Below are positions 16,231 through 52,608 of a stretch of DNA of 64,000 bases, piece by piece. The position numbers and the translations under genes are program-made. The DNA lies in IMG/VR virus record IMGVR_UViG_3300044957_000763, positions 62,001 through 126,000 of that record, one strand, 5' to 3'. The notes below the pieces were generated by a model that saw nothing but the letters and a program-made list of their open reading frames with translations, made no database searches and was not told the DNA's origin. The first letter of the stretch is position 1. Each line of letters starts with the position of its first letter.

Positions 16231-16236
16231 TATTAT
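16231..16236 (+). promoter_or_regulatory. Extended -10-like element (TGG-TATTAT) 6 nt before the dnaJ ATG
   Basis: TATTAT-atcatt-ATG with no SD; same geometry recurs at five other genes. Confidence 0.45.
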
Positions 16237-16242
16237 ATCATT

Positions 16243-17307
16243 ATGAGTGGACAAACAAAATCTCCATATGAGACACTTGGGGTAAGCAATACGGCTTCGG
16301 CCAAGGAAATCCAGTCTGCATATCGTAAACTGGCGAGAGAATACCACCCAGACGTTAATCCAAGCCCCGATGCAGAAAATAAGTTCAAAGAAATTGCGAA
16401 CGCATATGCGCTATTAAGTGACCCGGAAAAAAGAAGAGATTTTGACAACGGCGTAATTGATGCCAAAGGAGAACCAGTATATTCTCATTCTGGCAGACAC
16501 GAATGGGGCGGCGGGAGTCCATTCGATTTTATGAACGGATTTGGATTTAACTTTCAGCCACAAGTTAGGAATTCAAATGTTGTAGTGCATTATGAGGTTA
16601 ATGCGTCAAAGTTGTTTTCAGAACATGACGCACATATTAAGTATCAAAAGGTGTCTTCGTGTCTGGAGTGTTCTGGAAGTGGCGGTACTGGCAATACAAC
16701 AATATGCAACGAATGTCAGGGTGTTGGACATAAGACACACGTCCGAAGGGCAGGCAACATGGTCATACAAGAGCGAGGTGTGTGTGATAAATGCAAGGGT
16801 AGAGGACAAACCTACGATTCTAATTGCAAATCATGTGATGGAATTGGACTCAAGACCTCAAATGAAGAAATATTTCTCAAAATACCTGCTAATTGCGCAT
16901 TCGGGAGTATGATTGTTTCAGAACAAGGTCATCAAGAAACATTATCGGCTCCGGCGGGTGATTTGGTAATTGTAATGGTGCCCATAAGCAAATATTGTAA
17001 ATTTGATGGATACACAGCTAACTATGAGTTACTTGTAGACCCTATAAGGGCGATGCTTGGATGCAAGGTAAAAGCCAATGGATTGAAGCCAGAAGAGGAA
17101 TTGATAATAGATATTCCTAAGATGACAGAACCGAACACTCGTATCGTATTAAAACACAAAGGTTTGTCCGATATGAATGGTAAACGACATGATGCAAATA
17201 TCGTAATTGTGTATAAGATGCCTGTCAACCTGACGGATGCGCAAGAAGCAGCGCTGAATGCATATTTGTCACCCAACGATAGTGCACCGGAGAAACAAAC
17301 AAAATGA
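16243..17307 (+). CDS. dnaJ: Class A DnaJ (Hsp40) co-chaperone
   Basis: J-domain with HPD, short G/F region, four CxxCxGxG zinc motifs (CLECSGSG, CNECQGVG, CDKCKGRG, CKSCDGIG), C-terminal GDL domain. Confidence 0.95.
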   Translation: MSGQTKSPYETLGVSNTASAKEIQSAYRKLAREYHPDVNPSPDAENKFKEIANAYALLSDPEKRRDFDNGVIDAKGEPVYSHSGRHEWGGGSPFDFMNGFGFNFQPQVRNSNVVVHYEVNASKLFSEHDAHIKYQKVSSCLECSGSGGTGNTTICNECQGVGHKTHVRRAGNMVIQERGVCDKCKGRGQTYDSNCKSCDGIGLKTSNEEIFLKIPANCAFGSMIVSEQGHQETLSAPAGDLVIVMVPISKYCKFDGYTANYELLVDPIRAMLGCKVKANGLKPEEELIIDIPKMTEPNTRIVLKHKGLSDMNGKRHDANIVIVYKMPVNLTDAQEAALNAYLSPNDSAPEKQTK

Positions 17308-17489
17308 GCATGAAAAGAACAATACCAGGTGGGCGAGTGGAATCTATTTACACTCAGTCTAAGAATGGCAAAGAGGTAATTGCAACTACTGTTACACCAG
17401 TAGATACAGAGGAAGAAGTAGCAATTACTGAAGAAACAGAAACACCAGAAACAGCCGTCGAAGAAGAACCTGAATCTAAAGAGCAATGA
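17304..17489 (+). CDS. Small acidic hypothetical protein
   Basis: 61 aa, ATGA-coupled to both neighbours, Glu/Thr-rich tail. Confidence 0.55.
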   Translation: MSMKRTIPGGRVESIYTQSKNGKEVIATTVTPVDTEEEVAITEETETPETAVEEEPESKEQ

Positions 17490-17941
17490 GCGAATGGTCT
17501 GAAGTAGCCAGGCAATATATCTCATTGGCGGCACCGTACATTGTGCCACCAATTGCGTTGTTGTTTGCCACATTCTTGTTCAAATTTATTCTAGCTAATC
17601 GAAAGACTCGACAATATGCCAAAATGTTGATGAATGTATTGCAGGGTCAACTCGAAGCATCTATTGGTGCTGAAAAAAGCAAACAAGTACTGGAGCTGTG
17701 GAATGATATTGTCAAAGAAACAGAACAAAACGCCAACAGCAAGTCCAAAACATATAGCGAAAAGTATTTCGTCACGAGGATGAAAAATGAAGTTGCTTTG
17801 AGTGAAGACGAGGAACGCGAAATATCCAAAATACTTGCAACAATGAGAAGACGCAGGGGCAAGGATGGAGAGGTTGGTGCGGCGAGCGATGACGAAGACA
17901 ACTACAAACTTCCGGTTTTACCATGTCTATGTGAACTATAG
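17486..17941 (+). CDS. Hypothetical membrane-anchored protein
   Basis: 151 aa, one hydrophobic segment YIVPPIALLFATFLFKFIL, coupled start. Confidence 0.6.
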   Translation: MSEWSEVARQYISLAAPYIVPPIALLFATFLFKFILANRKTRQYAKMLMNVLQGQLEASIGAEKSKQVLELWNDIVKETEQNANSKSKTYSEKYFVTRMKNEVALSEDEEREISKILATMRRRRGKDGEVGAASDDEDNYKLPVLPCLCEL

Positions 17942-17974
17942 GATGCGATAATATAATAAGGCACAGCCTGGATT

Positions 17975-20662
17975 ATGGTTCGTATAGTCATAGATAACGC
18001 AGTATCAAACATACTTGGAAATTTTCATACTGACTACGAAGTCTCTAATGAAATTAGAGAAGAACTTCGTAATGCCTTGGCGTATCAAGTTAGTGGTGCC
18101 GAATGGTCTGAAAAGTACAAAGATGGCACCTGGGACGGAAAGATTTCTCTATACAACAAAAGAGAGAAAAGTTTTCCAACCGGATTGTTATTTAGGGTCA
18201 AACAAGTACTACAAGACAGACATGTTGAGTTTGTGGTAGAGAACAAGCGCGAGAAACCAGAAACAAACAAACTTGTAACAACTGCGTTTCAAGAATACAA
18301 AAGAGCCCTGCGGCCTTATCAAGAGTTAGTTGTTGAAGCCGCTAAGGCTCGTGGTCGAGGTGTGTTATCAGTCGCCACTGGCGGCGGAAAAGCCCTGTGT
18401 GTCAATACCCCAATCCTAACCGCAAATCGAGGATGGGTCACCATGGGTGAAATCGAAACGGGAGATATTGTATTTGACGATAATGGAAATACGACTCGTG
18501 TCTTATGCGCTCATTCAGTTTTGTTTAACCAAACATGTTATGATATTGAGTTTTCTGACGGTAGCACAATCACTGCCGATGCTGAACATCTGTGGAGTGT
18601 AAAAGTCACCTCTGGATACAGTAACAAATCTCAAATGATTACACTAACAACTCAGCAAATGCTCAATGATATGCTCAATGAAGGCAGTAGCACTTGGAGA
18701 ACCAAAAAGCGAAAGGGAAGAACTGAAAAACGTTCAATGTTTTATATCGAGAGACCAAGTGTGATTTCATATCCTTCAATTGATGCAAAATTAGAGCTAG
18801 ACCCATATTTGCTCGGTTGCTGGCTTGGTGGTGGCGGTACCAAATCTGGCATATTCAGTACTTCCGAGGATTATTTTATAGATGTATTTGCTAAACATGG
18901 ATTCATTCTTAGGCATGTGAGCAAATATGACTATTACGTCAAGGGCATGCGACAAAAATTGCGCGCAATAGGTGTTTGGGACAATAAACATGTACCTGAG
19001 CAATATCTACGAGGCGATATCACAACAAGACAACATGTTTTAGCAGGAATTATAGACACAGACGGTCACATCGACTCTCGTGGTCGAATAGAAATCACAT
19101 TATGCAACGAAAGGCTTGCCAAAGATGTGGTTGAATTATGTAGAGGTCTTGGTGCCCAGGTGAATGCTAAGAAATCAGATGCAAAACTAAACAAAATAAT
19201 TGTTGGAAGTAGATGGAGGATAAAGATTTCACCAAATAACAATATCATGTGTTTGCTCCCTAGAAAATATGAAAAAATAAATTACAAACGAAGAAAAACT
19301 ATCGGTCGCGTGTATGTTAAATCAATCAACGAACGTAGTTCAACTCCGGTGAGATGTATTACTGTTGATTCCGCGAGTAGGCTATATCTTACAGGCGAAA
19401 CACTGATTCCAACACACAATACTATGATTTCTGCCGAACTGATAGCACAGCTTAAAGCATTGCCAGTCGTATTTATTGTGCCATCAAAGACCTTGATGCA
19501 CCAAACCAGAAAAGAGTTTCACAAATACCTTAGAGTCAACGGAGAAAAGACCAAAATAGGTATTGCCGGCGACAGTATTTGCGACCTAAACCCAGATGGA
19601 GTCAACATTCTTACGTGGCAAACAGCCCTGCAAGCATTTGACGAGAAATACACATCCAAAGGAGATAAGGTGGTGTATGATGAGTTCACTGGATTACAAG
19701 TACGCAAAACCAAAGCACAACTCATTGATGATGTGAATGATGCCACCAGAAAACTCAAACAAGCCGAAGAGAGCAAAGGTGATACCAAAGCAGCAAAGGC
19801 TGCACTTAAAAAAGCACAAACACGACTCAAAAATCGAGAACAACAACTCATCAACAAGAGCCAAATTAAGCAACTCATCAGAGACACTCCTGTTTTCATT
19901 GTAGACGAAGCACACACGGCTGCAATTGTCATTCAGCGACTTGGAGAACACGCGGGCAAATCGTATTACCGCTTTGGTGTCACTGCCACAGCATGGAGGG
20001 AGGACAATCAAGAGATACGCATTGAGGGCACATTTGGGCGCATTCTCATTAACATTCGCCCTAGTGACTTGATTAGAGACGGATGGTTGGTAAGACCGTA
20101 TATATTCATGGTCAAAATCAAGCATATCGAAACACACTCAGACTATAACGATGCGTATTTGAAACATGTTGTGAATTGTTGGGAGAGAAACTATCGAATT
20201 AAGCAATTTGCTGAAGGACTTTTTGCGGCCGGAAGAAAAGTTCTCATACTTGTAGAAAGACTTGAGCACGGAGAAATTCTAGAACAAATGGTTTACAATT
20301 CGGTTTTTGTGCCAGGCAAAGACGATGGTAGCGGAAATGAAACCATTACAGAAGATGTAGAAAACTACAGATTGGAAATGCTTGCACGATGTGGTCGTGG
20401 TGAGCACATTTTGATTGCTACACAATGGGCCAATGTCGGTGTTGATGAACCTGCTATTGATTCATTGATACTTGCGGGGTCTAATCGGTCTTCTGTTACC
20501 ACATTTCAACAGGTTGGAAGAATCCTAAGACCGGCAGAAGGTAAAGAAAACGCTATTGTTATTGATTTTTCAGACGAACAAGATGATTTACATGACCACT
20601 CTCTCAAAAGGAAGAGAGCCTACGCACTTGAACCTGAATTCAAAGTATACAGAGTTCAATAA
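17975..20662 (+). CDS. SF2 DNA helicase (UvsW-like), intein-containing
   Basis: N-terminal EKYKDGTWDGKISLY; LRPYQ Q-motif; Walker A VATGGGK|T split by an intein; IVDEAH; GVTATA; QQVGRILR. About 552 aa after splicing. Confidence 0.9.
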   Translation: MVRIVIDNAVSNILGNFHTDYEVSNEIREELRNALAYQVSGAEWSEKYKDGTWDGKISLYNKREKSFPTGLLFRVKQVLQDRHVEFVVENKREKPETNKLVTTAFQEYKRALRPYQELVVEAAKARGRGVLSVATGGGKALCVNTPILTANRGWVTMGEIETGDIVFDDNGNTTRVLCAHSVLFNQTCYDIEFSDGSTITADAEHLWSVKVTSGYSNKSQMITLTTQQMLNDMLNEGSSTWRTKKRKGRTEKRSMFYIERPSVISYPSIDAKLELDPYLLGCWLGGGGTKSGIFSTSEDYFIDVFAKHGFILRHVSKYDYYVKGMRQKLRAIGVWDNKHVPEQYLRGDITTRQHVLAGIIDTDGHIDSRGRIEITLCNERLAKDVVELCRGLGAQVNAKKSDAKLNKIIVGSRWRIKISPNNNIMCLLPRKYEKINYKRRKTIGRVYVKSINERSSTPVRCITVDSASRLYLTGETLIPTHNTMISAELIAQLKALPVVFIVPSKTLMHQTRKEFHKYLRVNGEKTKIGIAGDSICDLNPDGVNILTWQTALQAFDEKYTSKGDKVVYDEFTGLQVRKTKAQLIDDVNDATRKLKQAEESKGDTKAAKAALKKAQTRLKNREQQLINKSQIKQLIRDTPVFIVDEAHTAAIVIQRLGEHAGKSYYRFGVTATAWREDNQEIRIEGTFGRILINIRPSDLIRDGWLVRPYIFMVKIKHIETHSDYNDAYLKHVVNCWERNYRIKQFAEGLFAAGRKVLILVERLEHGEILEQMVYNSVFVPGKDDGSGNETITEDVENYRLEMLARCGRGEHILIATQWANVGVDEPAIDSLILAGSNRSSVTTFQQVGRILRPAEGKENAIVIDFSDEQDDLHDHSLKRKRAYALEPEFKVYRVQ
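18392..19420 (+). mobile_element. Class 3 intein (343 aa) with LAGLIDADG homing-endonuclease domain
   Basis: Starts Ala (ALCVNTPI), block B TADAEHLW, block F VRCITVD, block G IPTHN followed by Thr+1; HEN motifs LLGCWLGGG and LAGIIDTDG. Confidence 0.92.
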
Positions 20663-21041: not shown

Positions 21042-21090
21042 ATTGGCATAATTAACATAGCTGGTTGAATTCAAACAGTATAAATTCACT

Positions 21091-22815
21091 ATGAGTAAAA
21101 AAATCAAAGCTCTAGGAATCGACCTTGGCACCACTAACAGTGTTGCAGCATATTTAAGGGAAGATGGTTCCATAGAAATCATACCAAATGCCGAAGGTGA
21201 AAGACTGACACCTTCGGTCTTTGCGGTATGGGACAACGACGAAGTTATCGTTGGTAAGCTGGCACACGATGGTGAGTCCATGAATGCCCATAGTACCGTA
21301 AGGTCTATCAAGCGACATATGGGCACTAATTATCGCGTTGAAGTTCAAGGCAAGAAGTATAGCCCAGAGCAAATTAGCGCGGCTATTTTGTCCAAAATCA
21401 AAAATGACGCCGAAGCATATCTTGGATACAAGGTCGATAAAGCTGTTATTACTGTGCCAGCATATTTCAACAGTGATGAGCGCCAAAGTACAAAAACCGC
21501 TGGTGAAATCGCTGGATTTGAGGTACTTCGTGTTATCAATGAACCAACAGCGGCAGCATTGGCCTATGGGCTCGACAAAAAAGAAGGTCAGACAGTTGTG
21601 GTTTACGACCTAGGTGGAGGTACTTTTGATATTACAGTGCTGCAACTAAGCGGTGACGGCATGTTTAATGTCAAATCCACAAGTGGAGACACACATCTAG
21701 GTGGTGATGATTTTGACCAGGTCATTATGGATTACTGCAGAAATCAATGGCATGATTATGTGGCCAATAATGACTCAGAGACCGCTTTGCGAACTGCTGC
21801 TGAATCCGCCAAGAAGGTTCTGACATCTACACAACAAGCCAAAATAGCAATTCACGGACTGCCAGTGGTAACTCTAACAAGAGATGTCTTCAATCATTTA
21901 ATTGAACCAATTGTCATGAAAACCAAGTCTTGTTTAGAATTAGCACTTAGGGACGCAGGCTTAAATGCTTCTAAAATTGACGAGGTTGTCTTTGTGGGTG
22001 GTTCTACGCGCATACCCCTTGTTGCATCCATGGTCGAACAATGGACTGGCAAAAAGCCAAATAAGAGCGTGAATCCAGACGAGGCTGTTGCTGTTGGCGC
22101 AGCTAGACAAGCCGCTATACTATCTGGCCAGACTGCACCAGATATTCTTTTGGTTGACGTCATACCATTAACTTTGGGAATTGAGACCGCAAGTGGTGTT
22201 ATGGACAGGATGATAAATCGCAACACGACCATTCCAACAGAAGCCTCAAAAATGTTCACAACTACTGAAGACAACCAAAGTTCAGTAGCAATCAAAGTTT
22301 ATCAAGGTGAACGACTAAAGGCCGATGGCAATAAACTCCTGGGTCAATTCAAACTAGAGGGGATTCCAGAAAAACCCAGAGGTGTTCCTGAAATTGAAGT
22401 TAGTTTCCATGTTGATGCTAACGGAATCCTAAGCGTTAAGGCCAAAGAACTTGTAAGCCAAATCGCGCAAAAGGTTGTACTTACTGGAAGTTCAAGTTTG
22501 ACATCTGAAGAAGTTGAACAAATGATGAGTGACGCCGAGAGCTCTCGAGCAGATGACGAAAAATACTTTGTACTAGCTGCGGCCCAAGATAAGATTCGAG
22601 GAAGAATACATCAGATAGAGTCACTTAGACGTGATGCATGGAGTGTACTAAGTACAAGCACAAAAGAAGAAATTGATGATGCGTTTCAGTCGTTAACAGA
22701 TGCCCAAGAAGACAAAAACATTAAGTTGCTTGAGTCTCTTGATGAATCATGTCAAGAAATTATGGTCAAGGCCAATAAAGAATTGTCTGAATTTGCTTCG
22801 AAGTTGATTAGATGA
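21091..22815 (+). CDS. dnaK: Hsp70/DnaK chaperone
   Basis: [45 protein letters not shown], linker [21 protein letters not shown]. Confidence 0.96.
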
Positions 22816-28547: not shown

Positions 28548-30462
28548 CTTCTACACCCTCACCGCTTCTCTCAAGCAAGTATTCCTTTCTGGCAGACACT
28601 GACTTACCCATGAATGTTGATAATACTCGTTCGGCGTCAGCAGCATCTGGTACGCTAATGCGAATCAGTTTTCTGGTGGCATAGTCCATTGTGGTTTCTG
28701 CCAATTCGTGTGAGTTCATTTCTCCAAGACCTTTGAACCTTGTAATTCTTGGGCTCTTAAGTTTATCTACAATCTTCCTAAGCTCGTCATCATTCCAGCA
28801 ATAGTGTTTGACACCTTTGGAGTCCTCGACTTTGTAAAGTGGTGGAACGGCCAAATACAGATGACCATATGATACCAGAGGTTTCATGTATCGGTAGAAG
28901 AAAGCCAATAAAAGTGTTTCAATATGACCACCGTCAACATCGGCGTCAGTCATAATGATAATTCGTTCATATCTTCGGTCTTCAAGTCTAAAAGCCTCTT
29001 TGCCAGGTATTTCTACTCCAGAACCAATTGCAAGTACTAAACTCTTGACTTCTTCGTTTTTTAGTATACTTGCAAGGTCGTTTTTTTCTGCGTTCATGAT
29101 TTTACCACGCAATGGCAGAATTGCTTGAGTTTGTGGGTCTCGGCCATCAATAGCTGAACCAGCGGCCGAATCACCCTCTACGACAAACAACTCACTGTTG
29201 TGCCGGCTATCAACATTGCAGTCTTTGAGTTTGCCAGGAAGTCTAGTGCTTTTTGCAAAGGCACCTTTGCGCTTGATAAGGTCGGATTCTCGCTTTGCTG
29301 CTTCGCGGGCTTTTTGTGCTAACTGTGCTCGTTCAACGATTCTCTTGAGGAACTGAGGGTCTCTTTGAAAATAATCACTAAGTTGCTCTGATACAACAGA
29401 AAGAACCGAAGACTCGGCCTCTGAAGAACCTAACCTTCCCTTTGTTTGTCCTTCAAATTGTGGTTGTCGCAATCGGACAGTAAGAACCAGTACCAATCCA
29501 TCTCTGATATCATCGCTTTGTAAGCTATCTTTAATAAGGCCGCCTTTTTTGGCCGCAGTATTAACAGCAGATGTTAGCGCACGTTTGAACCCTGAGATAT
29601 GCGTACCACCTTCTGGTGTATGAATATTGTTGGCATATGAATGCAGGCTTTCATCGTCGTCCGAACGATACTGCATGCCAAATTTTACAGTTACTGCACC
29701 ACTTTTACCTTCAATAACAAGTGGTTGCTCTGGGTAAAGTCCTGTAGAATCACCGATAAAATCTGACAACATATCAATGATTCCACCGTCTGACAGGAAC
29801 GTATATTGTTTGTCATTTGGCTCATCATTAAATGTTACTTTCAAACCTGGATTAAGGTGTGCAATTTCTCGCAGTCTTCGAACTATAATGTTTGAATCAT
29901 AGTGCTTAACCGACTTAAAAATACCTTTGTCCGGTGTGAATGTGATTTTGGTTCCAGATTTTCCTGCACTGCCAATTTTCTCAACCTTAGTCGAAGGCTT
30001 ACCTTTTGAATAAGTTTGTTTATAGCTCCCAACTGCTCCTGCTGATTTGTCGACTCGATTTACCACAACCTCGAAATATTCAGATAGTGCGTTTACACAC
30101 GACACACCAACACCGTGCAAGCCACCAGATTCCTGATATGCTTCATCGTGACCAAATTTACCACCGGCATGTAACACGGTCATAACAACTTCAAGCGTAG
30201 ACCTACCGTCAGATGGGTGATTATCTACCGGAATCCCTCGACCATCGTCTTCAATAGACACAGTGAATCCGTCTTTGAATAAAACAACGTTGATGTTCGA
30301 GCAAAACCCTTGCATTGCTTCGTCTACGGAATTGTCTAGAACCTCACCTATTAAGTGATGCATTCCTCGCTCTCCGTCATCACCAACGTACATGCCAGGT
30401 CGCAACCTAACGGCATCCATCGGTTCTAAAACCGTGATTGATTGTGTACTGTACTTGGACAT
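28540..30462 (-). CDS. gyrB: Type IIA topoisomerase subunit B (GyrB/ParE family)
   Basis: RPGMYVG, DNSVDEA, DDGRGIP, GGLHGVGVSCVNALS, EGDSAAG, PLRGKI, IMTDADVDG, RFKGLGEMN. Confidence 0.96.
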   Translation of the reverse strand: MSKYSTQSITVLEPMDAVRLRPGMYVGDDGERGMHHLIGEVLDNSVDEAMQGFCSNINVVLFKDGFTVSIEDDGRGIPVDNHPSDGRSTLEVVMTVLHAGGKFGHDEAYQESGGLHGVGVSCVNALSEYFEVVVNRVDKSAGAVGSYKQTYSKGKPSTKVEKIGSAGKSGTKITFTPDKGIFKSVKHYDSNIIVRRLREIAHLNPGLKVTFNDEPNDKQYTFLSDGGIIDMLSDFIGDSTGLYPEQPLVIEGKSGAVTVKFGMQYRSDDDESLHSYANNIHTPEGGTHISGFKRALTSAVNTAAKKGGLIKDSLQSDDIRDGLVLVLTVRLRQPQFEGQTKGRLGSSEAESSVLSVVSEQLSDYFQRDPQFLKRIVERAQLAQKAREAAKRESDLIKRKGAFAKSTRLPGKLKDCNVDSRHNSELFVVEGDSAAGSAIDGRDPQTQAILPLRGKIMNAEKNDLASILKNEEVKSLVLAIGSGVEIPGKEAFRLEDRRYERIIIMTDADVDGGHIETLLLAFFYRYMKPLVSYGHLYLAVPPLYKVEDSKGVKHYCWNDDELRKIVDKLKSPRITRFKGLGEMNSHELAETTMDYATRKLIRISVPDAADAERVLSTFMGKSVSARKEYLLERSGEGVEVG

Positions 30463-30511
30463 AGGCTGATTAACCTATTATGACACATTTGAATCGAACT
30501 AGTCAAGTGTG

Positions 30512-38595: not shown

Positions 38596-38616
38596 AAATA
38601 CATTTTATTGGTAAAG

Positions 38617-40733: not shown

Positions 40734-40735
40734 CG

Positions 40736-41353: not shown

Positions 41354-41359
41354 TGCACT

Positions 41360-41620
41360 TTACCATTTGATTTTGGATATGCTTGCTTCAACAATGGGTT
41401 TAAGACTGATATCCGGTGAGTTCAATGCAGCCTTTGTGATTGAACCATGTTCTCGTTCAATCTCTTTCATCACTCGTTTTACACCAAGTGTGACATCTTG
41501 CTCTCTGGGTTTGTTTAATGAGTGTTTCAACAAAAGGTCACGCACAAGACTGGTCGCAAGACTTTCCATAACCTTGCGTGTCGTATCTTCCATTGTTGAA
41601 ACACTTAAACGATACCACAT
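41360..41620 (-). CDS. Small hypothetical protein
   Basis: 86 aa, helical, N-terminus MWYRLS. Confidence 0.55.
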   Translation of the reverse strand: MWYRLSVSTMEDTTRKVMESLATSLVRDLLLKHSLNKPREQDVTLGVKRVMKEIEREHGSITKAALNSPDISLKPIVEASISKIKW

Positions 41621-41624
41621 GTTC

Positions 41625-42020: not shown

Positions 42021-42153
42021 GGATTTTAGAAACTAATCTTAATCATTTTAACTAAGAAAGATATACATGCCTAAGTAGGGTGACAAACATGCGACAAAAT
42101 TCTAGATGAGACATTCTGAAGGTTTTGAACTCAAAGATGCGATAATCATGTAT

Positions 42154-44394
42154 ATGGCCGATTCTGTGTTGACGATAAATGGTGAGGTCTCATCTATACG
42201 TAGATTTGACAGTGGGTGGTGCATTGCAAGCATTGTTCCAAAATCAGATGACGACAAGTCACTAACGATAGACGCGGTTACAATTGTTGGCACGATGCCT
42301 GGTGTCACAGAGGGCATGAATATCGCTGTTACAGCTAAGAAATCCGTGCATGAGAAGTATGGAACTCAATACAAAGTGGTTGACCTTTTATCGTGTGGTT
42401 ATTCAACCCTAGATGGCTTGAAGCGATACTTGGCCGGTGACGATTTTCCAGATGTAGGCGATGTCACGGCAACACTTATTGTTAATCATTTTGGCGAGAA
42501 TGTGGTTGAAATTCTAGATGCAGACCCAGAGCGCGTGTTTGAAGTCAAGGGGGCAAACTCAAATCGACTCAAGCGTGTCGCTGAGTTATGGGTAAAAGCG
42601 CGTAATAATCAACGCGGTTCTCTTGAACTAATAAAACTTGGACTGACATCATTACTTGCGCATCGTGTAATTAAGCACTTTGACAATGAAAACATATTGG
42701 ATGTCCTGAAATCTAATCCATATCGACTGACAGAAGTTCGCGGAATCGGATTTACTCGCGCAGATGAGGTTGCTTTGAGATGCAATATATTGACAGATTC
42801 CCCAAGAAGAATTGAAGCAGCCATCAAATACACGCTAGATGAATATGGTGTTCAAGGCCACTGTTATATGAATACCAATCGTTTAATAGCATCGGTTTGT
42901 GATTTGCTCACAGTAGAATCGAGTCAGGTTGGCACCTGTATTAACACACTCAGAAAAAGTGGTGACATTGTCATTGACGGCGCGTCAACATATTCGTCCG
43001 AGATGTACAATGCCGAGGTTGAAGTCGCGGGTGAATTGATAAAGATGATTCAGTACCCCCATGGCACAACACATTACGACAATTACGAACAGGTTGAAAG
43101 TGACTTGGAAGATTTTTCTGATTTTGATTCATCAATCAAACTAGATGGACTCCAGTTACAGGCGATTATGACCGCACTGAATGAGCGAGTTTGCGTTATT
43201 ACTGGCGGTCCGGGAACTGGAAAGACCACTATTACTCGAGCACTAGTGTCTTTACTAGACAAACACGGGTATAGCTATGAATTGTGTTCACCAACTGGCC
43301 GCGCGGCTAAGCGATTGTCAGAATCATCTGGCAAACAAGCCAGAACAATTCATCGTTTGTTGTCGTGGCAACCGAGTACAAGTACGTTTATGTACAACGC
43401 ATCATTGCCATTGACCACAAACTTTGTTTTGGTTGATGAGTTCTCTATGGTGGATTTACGTTTGTTCAGAGATTTGCTTCGAGCTTTAGAGACAAGTGCT
43501 AGAATTGTGATAATAGGAGATAAAGACCAGTTACCGTCTGTTGGAGCAGGCAACGTCCTGCATGACATTATTGATTCTGGTGTTGTTCCAGTAGTGCGCT
43601 TGAACAAAGTGTTTCGGCAAGAGACAGGAAATACAATTGTTGATGTGGCTCACTCTATTGTCGGTGGTGAAATCCCAGAATTGCCAACACCCAAGGATTC
43701 TAAAGGCAAAAATTGCATGATGGTCAACATCGGTGATGACGCATCAAAAATGCAAAGTTTTATTCTGCAACTTATCACTAAAGAAATCCCCAAATTGACC
43801 GATGACTCCGGCGCTAATTTGAAGGCCAAAGACGTTCAGATTTTGACCCCAAGACGAACTGGTAAATATTCTGTTGATGAGATGAATCCGTGGATGCAAG
43901 ACGCTGTCAACCCTGAAAAACCAGGCGTAGACCAAATTAAAGATGGGCACAGGGTGCTACGTGTTGGTGATAGGGTTATGCAAATAAGGAACAACTATGC
44001 GCTTGGTGACTCAGGTGTGTTTAACGGAGACATTGGATATATTGTCTCGAGTTCTATGACAGCAGACGGACCATTGGTTGGAGTTAGATACCCAGATATC
44101 ATGCATCCGGTAGAGTATGACGATGAGACACTTGACCAAATTCAGCACGCATGGGTTTCAACAGTTCATAAATCCCAAGGCTCTGAGATTCCAGTTGTTA
44201 TTTTTGTACTCCAGAGTTGCCATGGTATCATGCTGCAACGTAACTTGCTCTACACCGGTGTTACAAGAGCTAAAAGGATTTGTTTAATTATGGGAGAACA
44301 CAATGCCCTAGTTACTGCAATTAACAATGACAAGGTCATTAATCGAAACACGGGTTTGTCGAGTAGACTACAAGAGATGACTGGTGTTGACTAA
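42154..44394 (+). CDS. recD2: RecD2-like SF1B DNA helicase
   Basis: OB-like N-terminus (HEKYGTQY), HhH NPYRLTEVRGIGF, ITGGPGTGKTT, SPTGRAAKRL, TIHRLL, VDEFSM, GDKDQLPSVGAG, TVHKSQGSE, LLYTGVTRAK. ATG 42154 preferred over the track's 42106. Confidence 0.93.
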   Translation: MADSVLTINGEVSSIRRFDSGWCIASIVPKSDDDKSLTIDAVTIVGTMPGVTEGMNIAVTAKKSVHEKYGTQYKVVDLLSCGYSTLDGLKRYLAGDDFPDVGDVTATLIVNHFGENVVEILDADPERVFEVKGANSNRLKRVAELWVKARNNQRGSLELIKLGLTSLLAHRVIKHFDNENILDVLKSNPYRLTEVRGIGFTRADEVALRCNILTDSPRRIEAAIKYTLDEYGVQGHCYMNTNRLIASVCDLLTVESSQVGTCINTLRKSGDIVIDGASTYSSEMYNAEVEVAGELIKMIQYPHGTTHYDNYEQVESDLEDFSDFDSSIKLDGLQLQAIMTALNERVCVITGGPGTGKTTITRALVSLLDKHGYSYELCSPTGRAAKRLSESSGKQARTIHRLLSWQPSTSTFMYNASLPLTTNFVLVDEFSMVDLRLFRDLLRALETSARIVIIGDKDQLPSVGAGNVLHDIIDSGVVPVVRLNKVFRQETGNTIVDVAHSIVGGEIPELPTPKDSKGKNCMMVNIGDDASKMQSFILQLITKEIPKLTDDSGANLKAKDVQILTPRRTGKYSVDEMNPWMQDAVNPEKPGVDQIKDGHRVLRVGDRVMQIRNNYALGDSGVFNGDIGYIVSSSMTADGPLVGVRYPDIMHPVEYDDETLDQIQHAWVSTVHKSQGSEIPVVIFVLQSCHGIMLQRNLLYTGVTRAKRICLIMGEHNALVTAINNDKVINRNTGLSSRLQEMTGVD

Positions 44395-45992: not shown

Positions 45993-46056
45993 ATACCTCT
46001 TTGTACGGAATTGGTTGTGAACTTTCCTGTGAATATAGGTTTGACAGTGTCGTGAT

Positions 46057-47922: not shown

Positions 47923-48439
47923 GGCATTATATGATGTCATTAGAAGTTTGCGCGATAGCGGTATGACTCGCGAGGCGTCGCAAGTGATTGCCGCCGCTGA
48001 ACGCATTGCTGCGGCTGGTCCAGAACTATTGAATTCCAACCATATCACACAAGTTGGTCGCAGTGAACTTGGTCTTCGTGGTGGCCAGCAAACCAAGTTC
48101 TGGGAAGTATTTGGCCCTGTTCTTGGGTGGTTTAGACCAACTACGGGTCCGGCAAGAGGTGTCCCAGTGCCACAAATTATGCCAGGAGAGTCAATAGCGA
48201 ACTTCAGGCGAAGGTGCTATCAATGGTTACAACAATACGCACAGATTTCTGGGCAACAAGAGTTGATGACAAGTATGAGGAATTTGTTCTCTATGATTCA
48301 GCAACCAGCTACTATGAAACAACTTGAGGAAACCAATCGAAAAATCTACGATGAATTTGGTCGACAGTATGCTGAGGCCCAAGCAAAGGCCAAACAACGT
48401 GATAAGAAACCAACTCCGAAAACGCAAACAGTGACATAA
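47897..48439 (+). CDS. Hypothetical helical protein
   Basis: ATG 47897 (or 47873), in frame with the track ORF 47843. Confidence 0.6.
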   Translation: MSNQNELNRALYDVIRSLRDSGMTREASQVIAAAERIAAAGPELLNSNHITQVGRSELGLRGGQQTKFWEVFGPVLGWFRPTTGPARGVPVPQIMPGESIANFRRRCYQWLQQYAQISGQQELMTSMRNLFSMIQQPATMKQLEETNRKIYDEFGRQYAEAQAKAKQRDKKPTPKTQTVT

Positions 48440-48445
48440 TACTTT

Positions 48446-49399
48446 GTGCCGCCTAGAAAACCCAAGACACAAATAGCTGTGATTCAGCATATTTCCAATG
48501 CTTGTTCGTGTCCGTTCTACACTTCGAACAAGAGTGGTAAAGGTTTCTGCTTCATCAAGAATGCGATGACGTTAGACGAAGCCACAGGTTTTGTCTCAGA
48601 AAGCCGTGATTTAACACCAGAAGACTGGGCAGAAGACTGCGGTGGTTCGTGGGACTATTGTAGTGTATTGCCGTTGTTGTATGATTATGACGAGGGTGAT
48701 GTTGACCCCAATGCTCGAGATGTGGCTGATACATATAATCCATTTGAAGACGAAGGTGAAGACGAACCAGAAGCTCGTCCGTTAACTTCATTTACACCAC
48801 CGGCAATTGCTGAAAAACAAGCCGAAGAACGTGCTGAATTAGAACAAGAAAGTTATTCTGCTGGCAGTCTTGAATATGCCTCTGATGCAACGTTCTCTAT
48901 GCACCAGGTGCCAGACCCGTACAAGGTCAAATGTGATGCTATATTGGTTCCGGTAAACAACTTGTTGGAACCCATGGACCTTATGCTTATGAGGCACGCC
49001 GGTGCATATTTTGACTCAGCAAGCACCTCTTATCACGGACCAATTGTGACAGGAGAGATATATCCAGTCAAGTCGCCATATCCAAGTATTAGTGCGCGAA
49101 ATGTGGTGTACAGAGGTGTTGTTGCCGGTGTGCAATCCATCAACGTTGTTGAAATCGAAGATGCTGTGAGGAAAACACTATACCACGCCGAAGGTAATGG
49201 GGTCAATACGTTGGCAATGATGCCAATGGATTATGGTGGATATGACATAGAACTTACTGCTCAAGCACAAATTTCAACCATTCATGAGTTCTTAGTCACT
49301 GTTGAAACCAAGAACTTAAAGCACATTGTAATTCTGATTCCAGATGATACCACAATGGATGTGTTTGAAGACTATCAAAAGAGAATTTTTGATAATTAG
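48446..49399 (+). CDS. Cys-cluster plus degenerate macrodomain protein
   Basis: N-terminal CSCPFY...FCF...CGGSWDYC; acidic linker; C-terminal KCDAILVPVN...GEIYPV...IEDAVRKTL...NTLAMMPMDYG...LKHIVILI macro-like fold. Confidence 0.65.
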   Translation: MPPRKPKTQIAVIQHISNACSCPFYTSNKSGKGFCFIKNAMTLDEATGFVSESRDLTPEDWAEDCGGSWDYCSVLPLLYDYDEGDVDPNARDVADTYNPFEDEGEDEPEARPLTSFTPPAIAEKQAEERAELEQESYSAGSLEYASDATFSMHQVPDPYKVKCDAILVPVNNLLEPMDLMLMRHAGAYFDSASTSYHGPIVTGEIYPVKSPYPSISARNVVYRGVVAGVQSINVVEIEDAVRKTLYHAEGNGVNTLAMMPMDYGGYDIELTAQAQISTIHEFLVTVETKNLKHIVILIPDDTTMDVFEDYQKRIFDN

Positions 49400-49421
49400 T
49401 TGTAGGTTGTAATATCACTGC

Positions 49422-49778
49422 GTGCGAAAAAAGCCAGTGGAGCCAATCATGCCAATAAAAGACCTAAACACCGCCAGCGCACTTGTAAGAGGCTTAGTTG
49501 ATGCCATTCAGTGCCCAGCATTTGTTACTAGTCAAAGTAATGGGCTGGTGGCTTGCAATAAAGCAGCAAAAAGCATCAAAGGCAAAGACTTGTCAATGGT
49601 TCAGATGTCTGATGGTCAAGTTGTTGATATCAGTGGTAAGCAATACAAGGTCATTAGTAAAAAACTCAACCATAAAACAGATTGTATTTTATTCGAGTTA
49701 CACGATGTCACTGACCCGACAGAAAGACTGAAGTTCGCCGGGGCAGTACTTGACAAGGCATTGAGCGGGGCGTTTTAA
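49422..49778 (+). CDS. Stand-alone PAS-like small protein
   Basis: LVDAIQCPAFVTSQSNGLVACNKAA resembles a PAS N-terminus; ends ELHDVTD. Confidence 0.45.
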   Translation: MRKKPVEPIMPIKDLNTASALVRGLVDAIQCPAFVTSQSNGLVACNKAAKSIKGKDLSMVQMSDGQVVDISGKQYKVISKKLNHKTDCILFELHDVTDPTERLKFAGAVLDKALSGAF

Positions 49779-49780
49779 TT

Positions 49781-50356: not shown

Positions 50357-50359
50357 AGT

Positions 50360-50368
50360 TGGTATAAT
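50360..50368 (+). promoter_or_regulatory. Extended -10 promoter TGG-TATAAT
   Basis: Perfect TGnTATAAT, 6 nt before GTG 50375, no SD. Confidence 0.6.
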
Positions 50369-50374
50369 GCCTCT

Positions 50375-51067
50375 GTGAACCAAGAACTAGAATACGTCAG
50401 GGGCAGGACTGTGTATGCCGTGCGCTCTGGTTCGTACATGTACGGGCTAAATCATGACAATAGCGACGAAGACTCCCTCGGCGTGTTTGTTGACACACCG
50501 AATCGCACACTTGGTTTTTCCCCATACAAGACCATTAAAAACCCAGAATCAGACGAGACTTACAAGACTTTGCATGATTATGCAAAGCACCTGGCCAATG
50601 GTTCTTCTTTTTGGGTTGAAACACTGTTCGCACCAGAATCTTGCATTATTACCCAGCATCCTGCGTTTGATTGCTTCATCCTTCATCGAAATGCGTTTTT
50701 GACCAAGGCTTTGATTTCAAAATCACTTGGATTTATCGAAGCAATGACACGATTAAAACTGAGTGATGATACACCTAATATCTACAAACAACTATCACAC
50801 GCTGTCAGAGTTGGGTATATGATTGAGCGATGGCTTGACACGGGTATTTTTGAGGTGCAAATATCAGAGCATCGAGACGAACTAATGGATATTAAGTTTG
50901 CCAGGTCTTCAATTCAATTAGCGCACGACAAAGCTAAAAAGATGCATGAATCCATTGATGCACAATTACAGAAGTGTGGTCTGCCAGAAGATATCGGCAA
51001 TGAATTACTGAACGAGATAGTCACAGAGGCAACATTTGCTTATTGGACACATATGGGTGAGATGTAA
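50375..51067 (+). CDS. Pol-beta superfamily nucleotidyltransferase (PF10127/RlaP-like)
   Basis: AVRSGSYMYGLNHDNSDEDSLGVFV (GS...DxD) and KQLSHAVRV...WLDTG helical domain. Confidence 0.8.
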   Translation: MNQELEYVRGRTVYAVRSGSYMYGLNHDNSDEDSLGVFVDTPNRTLGFSPYKTIKNPESDETYKTLHDYAKHLANGSSFWVETLFAPESCIITQHPAFDCFILHRNAFLTKALISKSLGFIEAMTRLKLSDDTPNIYKQLSHAVRVGYMIERWLDTGIFEVQISEHRDELMDIKFARSSIQLAHDKAKKMHESIDAQLQKCGLPEDIGNELLNEIVTEATFAYWTHMGEM

Positions 51068-51378
51068 TGCCAGGTGTTATTCAAGAACTAAGTGATGTAA
51101 TGCGCGTTTGGCCTCATCAAGTCACTCCAGACAGTAGTGAGTATGACGCTGTTGTATTTGAGTATACAAAGGGAAATTGTTGGGATGTTGTTAGGTGGAT
51201 GGTTAATATCCGACAAGAATATGGACTGTCGGTTGTTTGTTGCTTTAATACCAACTGGGGTCTCGCCGGCACTAGCCTGCATTGCGTGGTGGATTCATTT
51301 GGCCCGCATTGGTTTAATAGCACTCATGAACTGGTGCAGGGTCTAAAGAACATGGTGGCAGGAAATGACTCGCTCTAA
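51067..51378 (+). CDS. Hypothetical protein
   Basis: 103 aa, TAATG-coupled. Confidence 0.5.
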   Translation: MPGVIQELSDVMRVWPHQVTPDSSEYDAVVFEYTKGNCWDVVRWMVNIRQEYGLSVVCCFNTNWGLAGTSLHCVVDSFGPHWFNSTHELVQGLKNMVAGNDSL

Positions 51379-51658
51379 ATGTCATGTTTGCGGCTCGACT
51401 TTTAATGTGCAAAAGCATGAGATGAGGTATTTGGGTAACGGGGACATTAAATCAGCACAGTTTGAGCATCCGGTTTCATATCCAGACTGGCAGGCACACA
51501 TTATGCTTACTTGTCCAATACACCGCCTGCCAAGAATGCCAGACAGTTGCTTGATTGATTTAGAGAGATTCATTGCTATAGAAAAACGCACCGCAATGAT
51601 TGATGAGCAGATTGAGACTGATTATTTAGAATCAGATTCCGAGGATATCATCGAGTAA
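51365..51658 (+). CDS. Small Cys/His hypothetical protein
   Basis: CHVC and CPIH motifs. Confidence 0.55.
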   Translation: MTRSKCHVCGSTFNVQKHEMRYLGNGDIKSAQFEHPVSYPDWQAHIMLTCPIHRLPRMPDSCLIDLERFIAIEKRTAMIDEQIETDYLESDSEDIIE

Positions 51659-51934
51659 TTGGTCGATGACTTTATTGGCAATTCTGTCATTGCCCATTTC
51701 GTAAAGATTTTCAGCAGTTTGAAGCCTGTTGTCAATGGGATTGTTTTGTATCCATGCACTTTGTGCTTGTATTAGCGGACAATCATTTGAGTTATTCATA
51801 AAGCAACGCGAATTGGAAACCCATGCTACTTCTGACATATTGAACTGTTTATTACACCCTGGACAAGTCCTGGTAAGCGATAACTTTGAAGTTTTCGCTT
51901 GGTTTTGGGGCTTCATATATTGTTTGATGTCCAC
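51632..51934 (-). CDS. Small hypothetical protein
   Basis: CPGC motif, C-terminal amphipathic helix. Confidence 0.5.
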   Translation of the reverse strand: MDIKQYMKPQNQAKTSKLSLTRTCPGCNKQFNMSEVAWVSNSRCFMNNSNDCPLIQAQSAWIQNNPIDNRLQTAENLYEMGNDRIANKVIDQLLDDILGI

Positions 51935-51969
51935 AATAAGTCTTTATAAAGCTGCGCACATCGTACCTA

Positions 51970-52003
51970 CAAAAAACAAGGCACTGCATTGCAGTGCCTT
52001 GTT
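51970..52003 (-). terminator. Rho-independent terminator
   Basis: 13-bp perfect stem AACAAGGCACTGC-ATT-GCAGTGCCTTGTT followed by a U-tract on the minus strand, 41 nt after the stop at 52045. Confidence 0.8.
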
Positions 52004-52044
52004 GTAAGGACGAACCCGTTGTGCCTCGAACACAGATGGGATTG

Positions 52045-52491
52045 TTACCAGCCCCGGTTGAAGTCCGAAGGCATCTGAGGCGTAACACCAACAGGAGCCT
52101 GGGCACCACTGGCACCAACAGCAGTGTTAATGTCGGCCTGAATGTTCTGAATCTCTCGTGCCAATGACAAGGCTCGAGTTGTGAGATAGTGAAGTTTCAA
52201 TCCAAAATGTGCTGCGATGTAGGCTTGTTCAGTCGCTGTGATGTTAGCGTTGGTTGTAACACCAACACCAGTTGGGTCTGCGATGTTATACGTACCGATG
52301 AATTGATTCTTAACTTGAAAAAGTTCAACCAATAGCAGATTAAGTGCTGTAGCAACATCGTCGTATGTTTTGGTTGGGTCGGTAATGTCTGGCTCGCCGT
52401 TGGCACCTACTGGGTTTACCATTTCGCGCAAGTCAGTAAGGTTGTTGACCGTTGTTGAAGGGCCGTTCAAATTACTAGGATATGTTGGCAT
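52045..52491 (-). CDS. Hypothetical (possibly virion) protein
   Basis: 148 aa, GGAG SD, followed by its own terminator. Confidence 0.7.
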   Translation of the reverse strand: MPTYPSNLNGPSTTVNNLTDLREMVNPVGANGEPDITDPTKTYDDVATALNLLLVELFQVKNQFIGTYNIADPTGVGVTTNANITATEQAYIAAHFGLKLHYLTTRALSLAREIQNIQADINTAVGASGAQAPVGVTPQMPSDFNRGW

Positions 52492-52564
52492 TGTGTTCTC
52501 CGTGTTTTTGGGCCGTCGAGGCGTCCCTGCATTGTTTTTCTACACCAATATTCTCAACACCTAC

Positions 52565-52572
52565 TATTTATA
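52565..52572 (-). promoter_or_regulatory. TATAAATA (T4-late-like) element
   Basis: Intergenic, 73 nt upstream of the 52491 start on the minus strand; single intergenic instance. Confidence 0.3.
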
Positions 52573-52608
52573 AGACTTTTTTCCATATCGTATCAGTATA
52601 AGTTTCTC

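What the first reader, a model, noticed from the sequence alone, without database searches (positions are those of the whole stretch)
16231..52608. -10 hexamer exactly 6 nt before the start codon at six genes: probable leaderless transcription programme
Seen: dnaJ TATTAT-atcatt-ATG (16231); dnaK TATAAA-ttcact-ATG (21079); phoH TAAAAT-gtattt-GTG (minus, 38602-38607); PAS gene TAATAT-cactgc-GTG (49410); nucleotidyltransferase TATAAT-gcctct-GTG (50363); fibre gene TATAAG-tttctc-GTG (52597). The macro gene has CATAAT with 5 nt. None has an SD, whereas several other genes (14035, 25001, 31165, 31636, 54461) do. Known: a TSS about 7 nt after the -10 box would fall on the start codon, the hallmark of leaderless mRNA (common in Actinobacteria and Deinococcus-Thermus). 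Inference: two translation-initiation classes exist, possibly letting these mRNAs escape shutdown of canonical initiation.
Basis: partly seen in the sequence, partly recalled or inferred. Interest (0 to 1): 0.6.

Follow-up and report, generated by a model that had tools for sequence, protein, structure and literature searches.

The report
Leaderless-type promoters in a lake megaphage
In this 479-kb lake-water phage about one gene in six has a bacterial-type -10 promoter box 5-7 bases before its start codon, so its mRNA should begin at the start codon (leaderless); this is a known expression style that the phage shares with its relatives and with its probable Armatimonadota host, not a new mechanism.

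Summary
The pattern is far above chance genome-wide. In the 478,840-bp virus genome, 59 of 436 genes have a hexamer matching TATAAT at 5 or more of 6 positions, 5-7 nt before the first start codon. About 10.6 are expected (Poisson 8e-25). These sites also carry features nobody selected for: an extended -10 TGn, a pyrimidine at -1, and an excess of divergent neighbours. The same motif precedes the phage's tRNA clusters and its tmRNA gene.

In the window, dnaJ, dnaK, the RlaP nucleotidyltransferase and the "fibre" gene keep hexamer and spacing in relatives while the flanks diverge. The "macro" site is plausible. A RecD2 helicase (ATG 42154) is a missed case. The phoH and "PAS" sites are wrong: orthologues show SD-led starts at TTG 38562 and ATG 49449.

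The spacing-6 peak recurs in a relative with 56% protein identity. It also recurs in the Armatimonadota chromosome assembled next to that relative. So this looks like host-type leaderless grammar, not an escape-from-shutdown programme. No RNA data exist, so the transcription starts are inferred. This is a new member of a known kind.

The parts
16228..16245 (+). dnaJ: TGg + TATTAT + 6 nt + ATG. Extended -10 promoter abutting the start codon, 15 nt after the stop of the upstream trypsin-like protease gene.
   Evidence: Sequence. PWM 8.6 bits, FDR about 1-3%. TGG, TAnnAT and the 6-nt spacing are kept in L001 (TAGAAT) and L002/L003 (TATCAT) with spacer changes. J domain starts at residue 8.
21079..21093 (+). 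dnaK: TATAAA + 6 nt + ATG. No TGn; belongs to the TATAAV flavour.
   Evidence: PWM 5.5, local FDR about 16%. Relatives keep agTATAA(T/G) + 6 nt + ATG while the rest of the intergenic region diverges (L001 TATAAT, L002 TATAAG). The 66% relative has TATAAG at 12 nt, i.e. a short leader.
42138..42156 (+). RecD2/YrrC-like helicase: TGc + GATAAT + 7 nt + ATG 42154.
   Evidence: The upstream ATGs at 42106 and 42148 are not conserved in L005 (ACG, CTG). TGcGATAAT and the 7-nt spacing are conserved with spacer changes. Pfam OB_YrrC starts at residue 17.
48432..48448 (+). The TGA is also the stop codon of the upstream gene.
   Evidence: PWM 9.7. Fully conserved in L005. The G001 orthologue has CATAAT + 8 nt + GTG. 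Plausible leaderless or 1-3-nt leader.
49410..49451 (+). GGAG at 49439-49442 + 6 nt + ATG 49449 is.
   Evidence: L005 shows 3 of 3 non-synonymous codon changes between 49425 and 49436, while GGAG and the ATG are conserved. The G001 orthologue starts at the homologous ATG behind AGGAG. The conserved hexamer could still be a promoter with a leader of about 27 nt.
50360..50377 (+). RlaP-family nucleotidyltransferase: TGg + TATAAT + 6 nt + GTG. The strongest site in the window.
   Evidence: PWM 11.5. Among the 64 best extended -10 hits of the genome. TTAACC lies 18 nt upstream. Conserved in L005/L006 with a spacer change and in the 46%-identity G001 orthologue (TACAAT + 6 nt + GTG).
52597..52611 (+). 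'fibre' gene (name unconfirmed): TATAAG + 6 nt + GTG, in a 117-nt divergent intergenic region that must hold a promoter.
   Evidence: cagTATAAG + 6 nt + GTG is kept in L005/L006 while spacer and upstream bases change. Codon 2 shows a synonymous change. The 37%-identity G001 orthologue has cagTATAAA + 6 nt + GTG.
The real start is TTG 38562, behind AGAGGA at 38573-38568.
   Evidence: PWM only 2.2, local FDR about 67%. The hexamer begins with the in-frame TAA. The G001 orthologue starts at the homologous TTG behind AGGAG..
30460..30485 (-). gyrB: TGt + CATAAT + 14 nt + ATG. Conserved extended -10 promoter with a leader of about 7 nt and no SD (short-leader class).
   Evidence: The G001 orthologue has TGcCATAAT + 11 nt + ATG.
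54450..54463 (+). Example of the SD-led class: GGAGGA + 5 nt + ATG 54461.
   Evidence: Conserved in L005, L006 and G001.

Best explanation
The window is part of a complete 478,840-bp virus genome from lake water. Roughly 50-75 of its 437 or so genes (11-17%) are preceded by a sigma70-type -10 element whose 3' end lies 5-7 nt, most often 6 nt, before the start codon. About half of these elements have the extended form TGnTATAAT.

Mechanism. Bacterial RNA polymerase normally starts about 7 nt downstream of the -10 hexamer, preferring a purine after a pyrimidine. Transcription from these promoters should therefore begin at the A or G of the start codon. The resulting leaderless mRNAs would be translated through their 5'-terminal AUG or GUG rather than through a Shine-Dalgarno pairing. 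A second class of genes is SD-led. A few genes (gyrB, the 2711-aa protein at 5872) have the same promoters 11-14 nt upstream, giving leaders of 4-7 nt.

In the window, the leaderless-type genes are dnaJ, dnaK, a RecD2 helicase, the RlaP nucleotidyltransferase, the gene at 52609 and probably the gene at 48446. phoH and the gene at 49449 are SD-led.

The grammar is inherited and host-like. It recurs in a relative with 56% protein identity and in the Armatimonadota-labelled chromosome assembled next to that relative.

Shown: motif, spacing, enrichment, flanking features and conservation. Inferred: the transcription start position, leaderless translation, and which sigma factor reads the sites (the host's, or one of the three phage-encoded sigma factors for the TG-less TATAAA/G/C flavour).
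For: 1. Positional peak. 22, 27 and 10 genes at spacings 5, 6 and 7, against 3.55 per spacing in the background; P = 8e-25. PWM score of 5 or more in 75 genes at FDR 4-9%.
2. Features not used to pick the sites.
- T at -3 in 47%, G at -2 in 58%, G or C at -1 in 74% of sites, relative to the hexamer.
- TGn in 44% of sites, against 10.9% of all such hexamers in the genome.
- Pyrimidine before the start codon in 78%.
3. The motif is a promoter. 48 of the 64 best hits are intergenic. Many lie upstream of tRNA clusters, and one lies 8 nt before the tmRNA gene, which is non-coding. Several have TTGACA at about 17 nt.
4. Gene-order context.
- The upstream neighbour is divergent for 30% of these genes, against 13% of the others.
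- Six divergent pairs have start codons only 19-55 nt apart, each with its own box. That leaves no room for leaders.
5. Conservation.
- Hexamer and spacing are kept at dnaJ, dnaK, RecD2, the nucleotidyltransferase and the 'fibre' gene in relatives at 80-94% identity, while flanks and spacers change.
- The nucleotidyltransferase and 'fibre' sites are also kept in the 37-46% orthologues of G001.
- Genome-wide orthologue association: odds ratio 4.1, p = 0.0012.
6. The same spacing-6 peak appears in the relative (31-33 of 555 genes) and in 535 kb of adjoining bacterial sequence (TANNNT in 32 of 442 genes), with the same G-rich positions before the box.
7. Literature. A TANNNT signal with its first T about 12 nt before the start is the accepted computational mark of leaderless genes (PMC3160421). 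It has been verified experimentally in Deinococcus (PMC4007540, PMC12340547).
Against: - No transcription start has been mapped. All 12 listed runs are lake-water or freshwater-sediment metagenomes, and none is on record as RNA.
- A generic -35/-10 scan of the window is not enriched over shuffles, so most sites rely on the -10 alone.
- dnaK and 'fibre' lack TGn and lack T at the last hexamer position, which is normally highly conserved.
- Four window sites would start with GUG, which works poorly on leaderless mRNA in E. coli. It does work in mycobacteria and Deinococcus.
- Start codon usage does not differ between the TA-led and SD-led classes.
- In the 56% relative, dnaJ and dnaK have the box at other spacings.
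- Gene starts come from my own caller, not from a curated annotation.
Confidence: 0.75

Rival explanations
1. Chance plus annotation artefact. AT-rich hexamers are common, and taking the first ATG/GTG/TTG after an in-frame stop enriches TAA/TAG-containing hexamers just upstream, so the six sites mean nothing.
For: This is true for two of the six. The phoH and 'PAS' hexamers start with the in-frame TAA, and their real starts lie downstream behind SD sequences. About one such site is expected among the 45 or so genes of the window.
Against: The genome-wide peak has P = 8e-25. TGn and the -1 pyrimidine were not selected for. The reverse scan from motif to ORF shows the same peak. The sites are conserved in relatives.
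Confidence: 0.05
2. The boxes are real promoters but the mRNAs are not leaderless. Transcription starts a few bases upstream or downstream, or the true start codons lie further downstream, giving ordinary short-leader mRNAs.
For: The same promoters occur at 11-14 nt at gyrB and at the gene at 5872, and at 12 nt at dnaK of G001. The 'macro' spacing varies between 5 and 8 nt. There is a modest excess at spacings 8-12 in the relative and in the bacterial part.
Against: The sharp mode at 6 nt is exactly the canonical distance from -10 to +1. No SD or alternative conserved start is seen at dnaJ, dnaK, the nucleotidyltransferase or 'fibre'. Leaders of 0-3 nt behave as leaderless in any case.
Confidence: 0.12
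3. The motif is a translation signal, not a promoter: an A/U-rich element (for example an S1 or standby site) that helps initiation on polycistronic mRNAs lacking SD.
For: 38% of the co-directional TA-led genes sit 25 nt or less after the upstream gene. dnaJ is one of them, so read-through transcripts must exist. Many genomes have non-SD A/U-rich upstream signals.
Against: G at -14 and TG are promoter features, not A/U-rich ones. The identical motif precedes tRNA clusters and the tmRNA gene. TTGACA at 17 nt occurs at several sites. Divergent neighbours are enriched.
Confidence: 0.05
4. One reading: leaderless mRNAs form a phage programme that lets these genes escape a phage-imposed shutdown of canonical (SD/IF3-dependent) initiation, as proposed for Thermus phage phiYS40.
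For: Two initiation classes do coexist. The TA-led class is concentrated at 140-320 kb, among small, probably early genes. The phiYS40 precedent is from my own knowledge of Sevostyanova et al. 2007, which is listed in PMC12340547; I could not read the paper itself.
Against: No IF1, IF3, S1 or S21 gene is present in the phage. The putative host chromosome shows the same signal in about 7-8% of its genes, so leaderless translation is normal there. Both structural and replication genes are found in both classes.
Confidence: 0.1

Closest known systems
TA-led (leaderless) genes of bacteria as defined computationally by Zheng et al. 2011 (PMC3160421) and verified in Deinococcus (PMC4007540, PMC12340547)
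   Same: A TANNNT/TATAAT signal whose first T lies about 12 nt before the start codon. No SD. Coexists with SD-led genes. AUG and GUG starts. The -10 alone is often sufficient and a -35 is dispensable.
   Different: Here the signal is in a 479-kb virus genome of 44.5% GC, and in an Armatimonadota-labelled chromosome. That phylum does not appear in the parts of the 2011 survey that I read. The TGn extension is frequent. The fraction of genes (11-17%) is lower than in Deinococcus-Thermus (36-46%).
Thermus thermophilus phage phiYS40 middle/late genes (Sevostyanova et al. 2007, J Mol Biol 366:420; cited from memory and from the reference list of PMC12340547)
   Same: A large phage using host RNA polymerase, with -10 or extended -10 promoters lacking a -35, placed so that many transcripts are leaderless.
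   Different: The genome here is about three times larger and the host phylum is different. The temporal class is unknown. The densest cluster looks like an early or accessory region rather than a late one. No evidence exists on initiation-factor changes.
Extended -10 (TGn) sigma70 promoters
   Same: TG one base upstream of the hexamer in 44% of sites. No aggregate -35 signal.
   Different: A subclass of 18 sites, including dnaK and 'fibre', has TATAA followed by A, G or C and never has TG. It may be read by one of the three phage sigma factors.
Jumbo phages with mapped transcriptomes (phiKZ, PMC8244752; AR9, PMC5312081)
   Same: Giant phage genomes with several promoter classes.
   Different: phiKZ showed no leaderless transcript, and AR9 leaders are 26-491 nt long. 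Both use their own multisubunit RNA polymerases. No such polymerase was detected here by Pfam.

Membership tests
TA-led / leaderless genes (Zheng et al. 2011 criteria) | TANNNT-like signal with its first T about 12 nt upstream of the translation start | tested here: met
   Modal spacing is 6 nt between hexamer and start, which puts the first T at -12. This holds at dnaJ, dnaK, the nucleotidyltransferase and 'fibre'.
TA-led / leaderless genes (Zheng et al. 2011 criteria) | Signal enriched over background or shuffled controls | tested here: met
   59 observed against 10.6 expected, P = 8e-25. Internal starts show under 1% per spacing. A Markov-simulated genome gives 20 PWM hits against 64 observed.
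TA-led / leaderless genes (Zheng et al. 2011 criteria) | No Shine-Dalgarno sequence at the same start | tested here: met
   84 of 101 TA-led genes have no 4-mer SD at any plausible start. None is present at the validated window sites.
Leaderless mRNA (experimental definition) | Transcription start mapped at, or within a few nt of, the start codon | not testable with these tools
   All 12 listed runs are environmental metagenomes and none is on record as RNA.
Extended -10 sigma70 promoter | TG at -15/-14, one base upstream of the hexamer | tested here: met
   Genome-wide 44% against 10.9%. In the window it is met at dnaJ, RecD2, 'macro' and the nucleotidyltransferase, and not met at dnaK and 'fibre'.
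Canonical two-hexamer sigma70 promoter | TTGACA-like -35 box 16-18 nt upstream | tested here: not met
   No aggregate -35 information. The generic scan of the window is not enriched over shuffles. Only some sites have TTGACA, such as genome positions 231413 and 158808, and several promoters upstream of tRNA clusters.
T4-type late promoter (TATAAATA, gp55) | Conserved octamer TATAAATA | tested here: not met
   Positions 7-8 are not conserved. dnaK has TATAAATT, and its relatives have TATAATAG and TATAAGTC. The 'fibre' gene has TATAAGTT.
phiYS40-type leaderless programme with altered initiation factors | Phage-driven change of IF2/IF3 favouring leaderless translation | not testable with these tools
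   Only gene content could be checked. The phage has no IF1, IF3, S1 or S21 homologue.

The most novel reading that the evidence does not exclude
The phage runs at least three separate expression grammars: host-type extended -10 leaderless promoters, a TG-less TATAAA/G/C leaderless flavour, and a GC-rich CCGGCCCCGGA element with A-rich short leaders at 316-370 kb. Each would be read by a different one of its three sigma factors. Because a leaderless gene can only be translated from its own promoter's transcript, promoter position would itself gate translation in time. This would be a transcription-coded translation switch in a half-megabase phage of Armatimonadota.
Probability: 0.12. Interest if true: 0.7.

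Novelty: new member of a known kind. Interest (0 to 1): 0.45.

Why it matters
The result corrects gene starts, because first-GTG calls are unreliable here. It supplies a promoter model for annotating this uncultured megaphage family.

It also gives an independent host clue. The phage's promoter and leaderless grammar matches that of the Armatimonadota chromosome assembled next to a relative.

It extends leaderless gene organisation to a roughly 0.5-Mb phage. The jumbo phages with mapped transcriptomes (phiKZ, AR9) show the opposite, with long leaders and their own polymerases. It also extends the pattern to a phylum where I found no report of it in the two literature searches I ran.

In practice, leaderless genes are translated only from their own promoter. 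Expression of dnaJ, dnaK and similar genes would then be set by promoter firing, not by read-through transcription.

Tried and rejected
- Megablast of dnaK against the phage collection found no match.
- Single-protein scans of IMG/VR with DnaK and with the nucleotidyltransferase found no relatives.
- The search for RNA runs returned only environmental metagenome runs, none on record as RNA. It could not show a transcription start.
- The generic -35/-10 and terminator scans of the window were no better than shuffles, so they do not help identify these promoters.
- T4-type late promoter: the octamer is not conserved.
- Stop-codon recoding was considered because ARAGORN reports tRNAs with CTA and TCA anticodons. 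Reading TAG or TGA as sense gives no region-specific ORF gain, so the code is standard.
- Integration of the phage: no tyrosine or serine recombinase in this genome. No tRNA gene and no integrase among the 10 ORFs I scanned at the G001 junction. The phage-bacterium join in G001 therefore stays unexplained.
- Pfam and PHROGs gave no support for the names 'macro', 'PAS' or 'fibre'.
- The phiYS40 paper itself is not held. It is cited from memory and from a reference list.
Full report
**What the window is.** The window is bases 62,001-126,000 of a single 478,840-bp contig with 44.5% GC. The tools classify it as a virus record with direct terminal repeats and 100% estimated completeness. All twelve listed sequencing runs that hold this stretch, or part of it, are lake-water or freshwater-sediment metagenomes, and none is on record as RNA. 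The genome carries 63 tRNA genes and a tmRNA gene. It encodes three sigma70-family proteins. It has no detectable IF1, IF3, S1, S21, RNA polymerase beta domain or integrase. It uses the standard genetic code. No gene finder was installed, so I wrote a Markov-model gene caller. It found 437 genes covering 84% of the genome. For each gene I kept every start codon compatible with the coding signal.

**Checking the observation.** Pfam confirms DnaJ, Hsp70, PIN+PhoH and an RlaP-family nucleotidyltransferase. It gives no support for the names 'macro', 'PAS' or 'fibre'.

**Is it more than chance?** I counted hexamers matching TATAAT at 5 or more of 6 positions, by spacing from the first start codon of each gene. 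The counts are 22, 27 and 10 at spacings 5, 6 and 7. The mean is 3.55 per spacing at 9-30. That is 59 observed against 10.6 expected, Poisson P = 8e-25. Internal in-frame ATG/GTG/TTG codons carry such hexamers in under 1% of cases per spacing.

The reverse test needs no gene calls. Of 55 occurrences of TGnTATAAT, 10 are followed at exactly 6 nt by a start codon opening an ORF of at least 60 aa. Of the 64 best matches to an 11-nt matrix, about 24 are followed at 5-8 nt by a start opening an ORF of at least 58 aa. A first-order Markov genome gives 20 such matrix matches.

**Why the motif is a promoter.**
- I aligned 109 start-proximal hexamers, chosen only by hexamer match and spacing. The alignment shows T at -3 in 47%, G at -2 in 58% and G or C at -1 in 74%. 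This is the extended -10 element TGn, often TGTGn. There is no aggregate -35 signal.
- TGn accompanies 44% of these sites, against 10.9% of all such hexamers in the genome.
- The base before the start codon is a pyrimidine in 78% of sites. That fits the known preference for a pyrimidine at -1 and a purine at +1 of transcription starts.
- Of the 64 best matrix hits, 48 are intergenic. Many lie upstream of tRNA clusters, and one lies 8 nt before the tmRNA gene. Several have TTGACA about 17 nt upstream. Non-coding genes need no translation signal, so this argues against a ribosome-binding role.
- Genes with the box have a divergent upstream neighbour in 30% of cases, against 13% for other genes.
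- Six divergent gene pairs have start codons only 19-55 nt apart, each with its own box at 5-7 nt. That leaves no room for leaders.
- RNA polymerase starts about 7 nt after the -10 hexamer (established knowledge). A 6-nt spacer therefore puts +1 on the first base of the start codon.
- A TANNNT signal with its first T about 12 nt before the start is the accepted computational mark of leaderless genes (PMC3160421). It has been validated in Deinococcus (PMC4007540, PMC12340547).

**Distribution across the genome.** After subtracting background, about 50-75 genes (11-17%) belong to this class. They are concentrated at 140-320 kb, among small genes and the tRNA clusters. About 156 genes have an SD-like 4-mer instead.

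A subclass of 18 sites has TATAA followed by A, G or C and never has TG, whereas 44 of the 83 hexamers ending in T do. This subclass is itself enriched at spacings 6-7. It may be read by a phage sigma factor, but that is inference.

**The individual window sites, judged with relatives.** A protein search with DnaK found relatives at 94% to 62% identity. I fetched syntenic loci L001 (80%), L002/L003 (89%) and L004 (66%). I also fetched L005/L006, which are collinear with window 40,353-58,082 at about 80% nucleotide identity.
- **dnaJ.** TGG, TAnnAT and the 6-nt spacing are kept, while the hexamer middle and the spacer change (TATTAT, TAGAAT, TATCAT).
- **dnaK.** agTATAA(A/T/G) + 6 nt + ATG is kept, while the rest of the intergenic region diverges.
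- **Nucleotidyltransferase.** TGgTATAAT + 6 nt + GTG is kept, with one spacer change.
- **'fibre'.** cagTATAAG + 6 nt + GTG is kept, with changes in the spacer and upstream. Codon 2 has a synonymous change, so the GTG is the real start.
- **'macro'.** TGaCATAAT + 5 nt + GTG is fully conserved.
TGcGATAAT + 7 nt + ATG 42154. The two upstream ATGs are not conserved in L005.
- **'PAS', rejected.** Three of three codons between the GTG at 49422 and the ATG at 49449 carry non-synonymous changes. GGAG + 6 nt + ATG 49449 is conserved.
- **phoH, rejected.** The orthologue in G001 starts at the TTG homologous to 38562, behind AGGAG. The window has AGAGGA there.

**A distant relative and the probable host.** L004 lies on a 1,363,254-bp contig of an NCBI MAG labelled Armatimonadetes bacterium, held here as G001. 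I read 1.08 Mb of that contig. Positions 1 to about 532 kb (GC 0.53) form one complete, circularly permuted, syntenic relative of this phage, with 306 reciprocal best hits at a mean 56% identity. After that point GC rises to 0.60-0.61 and phage genes stop.

The relative shows the same peak, with 31-33 of 555 genes at spacing 6. So does the bacterial part, where TANNNT is found at spacing 6 in 32 of 442 genes against a background of 2-5. Both have the same G-rich positions before the box and mostly ATG or GTG starts.

Orthologous genes share the leaderless-type arrangement more often than chance would give: 14 pairs, odds ratio 4.1, p = 0.0012. These pairs include the nucleotidyltransferase (TACAAT + 6 nt + GTG) and 'fibre' (cagTATAAA + 6 nt + GTG), at only 46% and 37% protein identity. 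In that relative, dnaJ and dnaK have the box at other spacings. gyrB and the gene at 5872 have conserved boxes 11-14 nt upstream in both genomes. A short-leader class therefore grades into the leaderless one.

**Interpretation.** The best-supported reading is host-type sigma70 promoters, often of the extended -10 kind, that abut the start codon and give leaderless mRNAs. Neither the concept nor the signature is new. A large Thermus phage, phiYS40, is a precedent. I know it from memory and from the reference list of PMC12340547; the paper itself is not held. By contrast, phiKZ showed no leaderless transcripts (PMC8244752), and AR9 has leaders of 26-491 nt (PMC5312081).

It has no support. The phage has no initiation-factor or ribosomal-protein genes, and the putative host itself uses the same grammar.

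The host clue points to Armatimonadota, but it rests on one assembled contig whose phage-bacterium junction I could not explain. I found no integrase in this phage. At the junction I found no tRNA gene, and none of the 10 ORFs I scanned there is an integrase.

**Limits.** No transcription start has been mapped. Gene starts come from my own caller. The matrix was trained on the sites it scores, although the enrichment tests do not depend on it. The generic two-hexamer scan of the window is uninformative.

Noticed in passing
L004, L007-L065 (G001 contig C5 = NCBI GCA_018268375.1 JAFDWS010000002.1), positions 1-532,000 versus 532,000-1,363,254: A 1.36-Mb contig of an 'Armatimonadetes bacterium' MAG begins with one complete, circularly permuted relative of this phage, about 532 kb long (GC 0.53). 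It starts and ends at the point that equals about 136 kb in this genome. The contig then continues into bacterial DNA of GC 0.61. This is either a half-megabase prophage or an assembly chimera. No tRNA gene was found at the junction, none of the 10 ORFs scanned there is an integrase, and this phage has no recombinase.
   Followed up: partly
Outside the window: genome 316,000-370,000 (would be window coordinates 254,000-308,000), + strand: There are 60 copies of GGCCCCGG. Nearly every intergenic region in this array of short genes carries CCGG(C/T)CCCGGA(A/G) 20-45 nt before the ATG. About half of the copies form the left arm of a GC hairpin followed by a T-run; the others stand alone. Starts there have an A-rich '...aaacaATC ATG' context with no SD and no TATAAT. 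This is a third, phage-specific expression signal.
   Followed up: partly
Outside the window: genome 32.7-33.2, 144-168, 205-218, 233, 256 and 319 kb: The genome has 63 tRNA genes and a tmRNA with tag ANNNFALAV. ARAGORN also reports tRNAs with anticodons CTA (157,728) and TCA (233,368), which would read UAG and UGA. No region gains ORF length when TAG or TGA is read as sense, so there is no sign of recoding.
   Followed up: partly
Outside the window: genome 173,235; 316,424; 432,057: Three sigma70-family genes score over the Pfam cut-off, and no multisubunit RNA polymerase was detected. This suggests a sigma cascade on the host polymerase.
   Followed up: no
window 37,159-37,206, minus strand: Between the phoH stop codon and the ATG of the 1808-aa Tricorn/PD40-repeat protein lies TGTATAAA, followed by a 13-bp GC hairpin whose T-run abuts the ATG. 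The G001 orthologue keeps TGTATAAG and the hairpin, with compensatory stem changes. A start about 7 nt after the box would fall inside the left arm of the stem. Transcripts started there could then not form the terminator.
   Followed up: no
window 17,939-17,977 and 5,850-5,874, + strand: There are more conserved -10-like boxes at a short distance from start codons without SD. TGcGATAAT lies 24 nt before the UvsW-like helicase ATG at 17975. TGTACAAA lies 14 nt before the ATG at 5872 of the 2711-aa protein, and it is identical in G001.
   Followed up: no
genome ends (1-100 and 478,741-478,840; outside the window): The two contig ends share a tandemly repeated unit of about 70 nt, in line with the direct terminal repeats reported for the record.
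   Followed up: no
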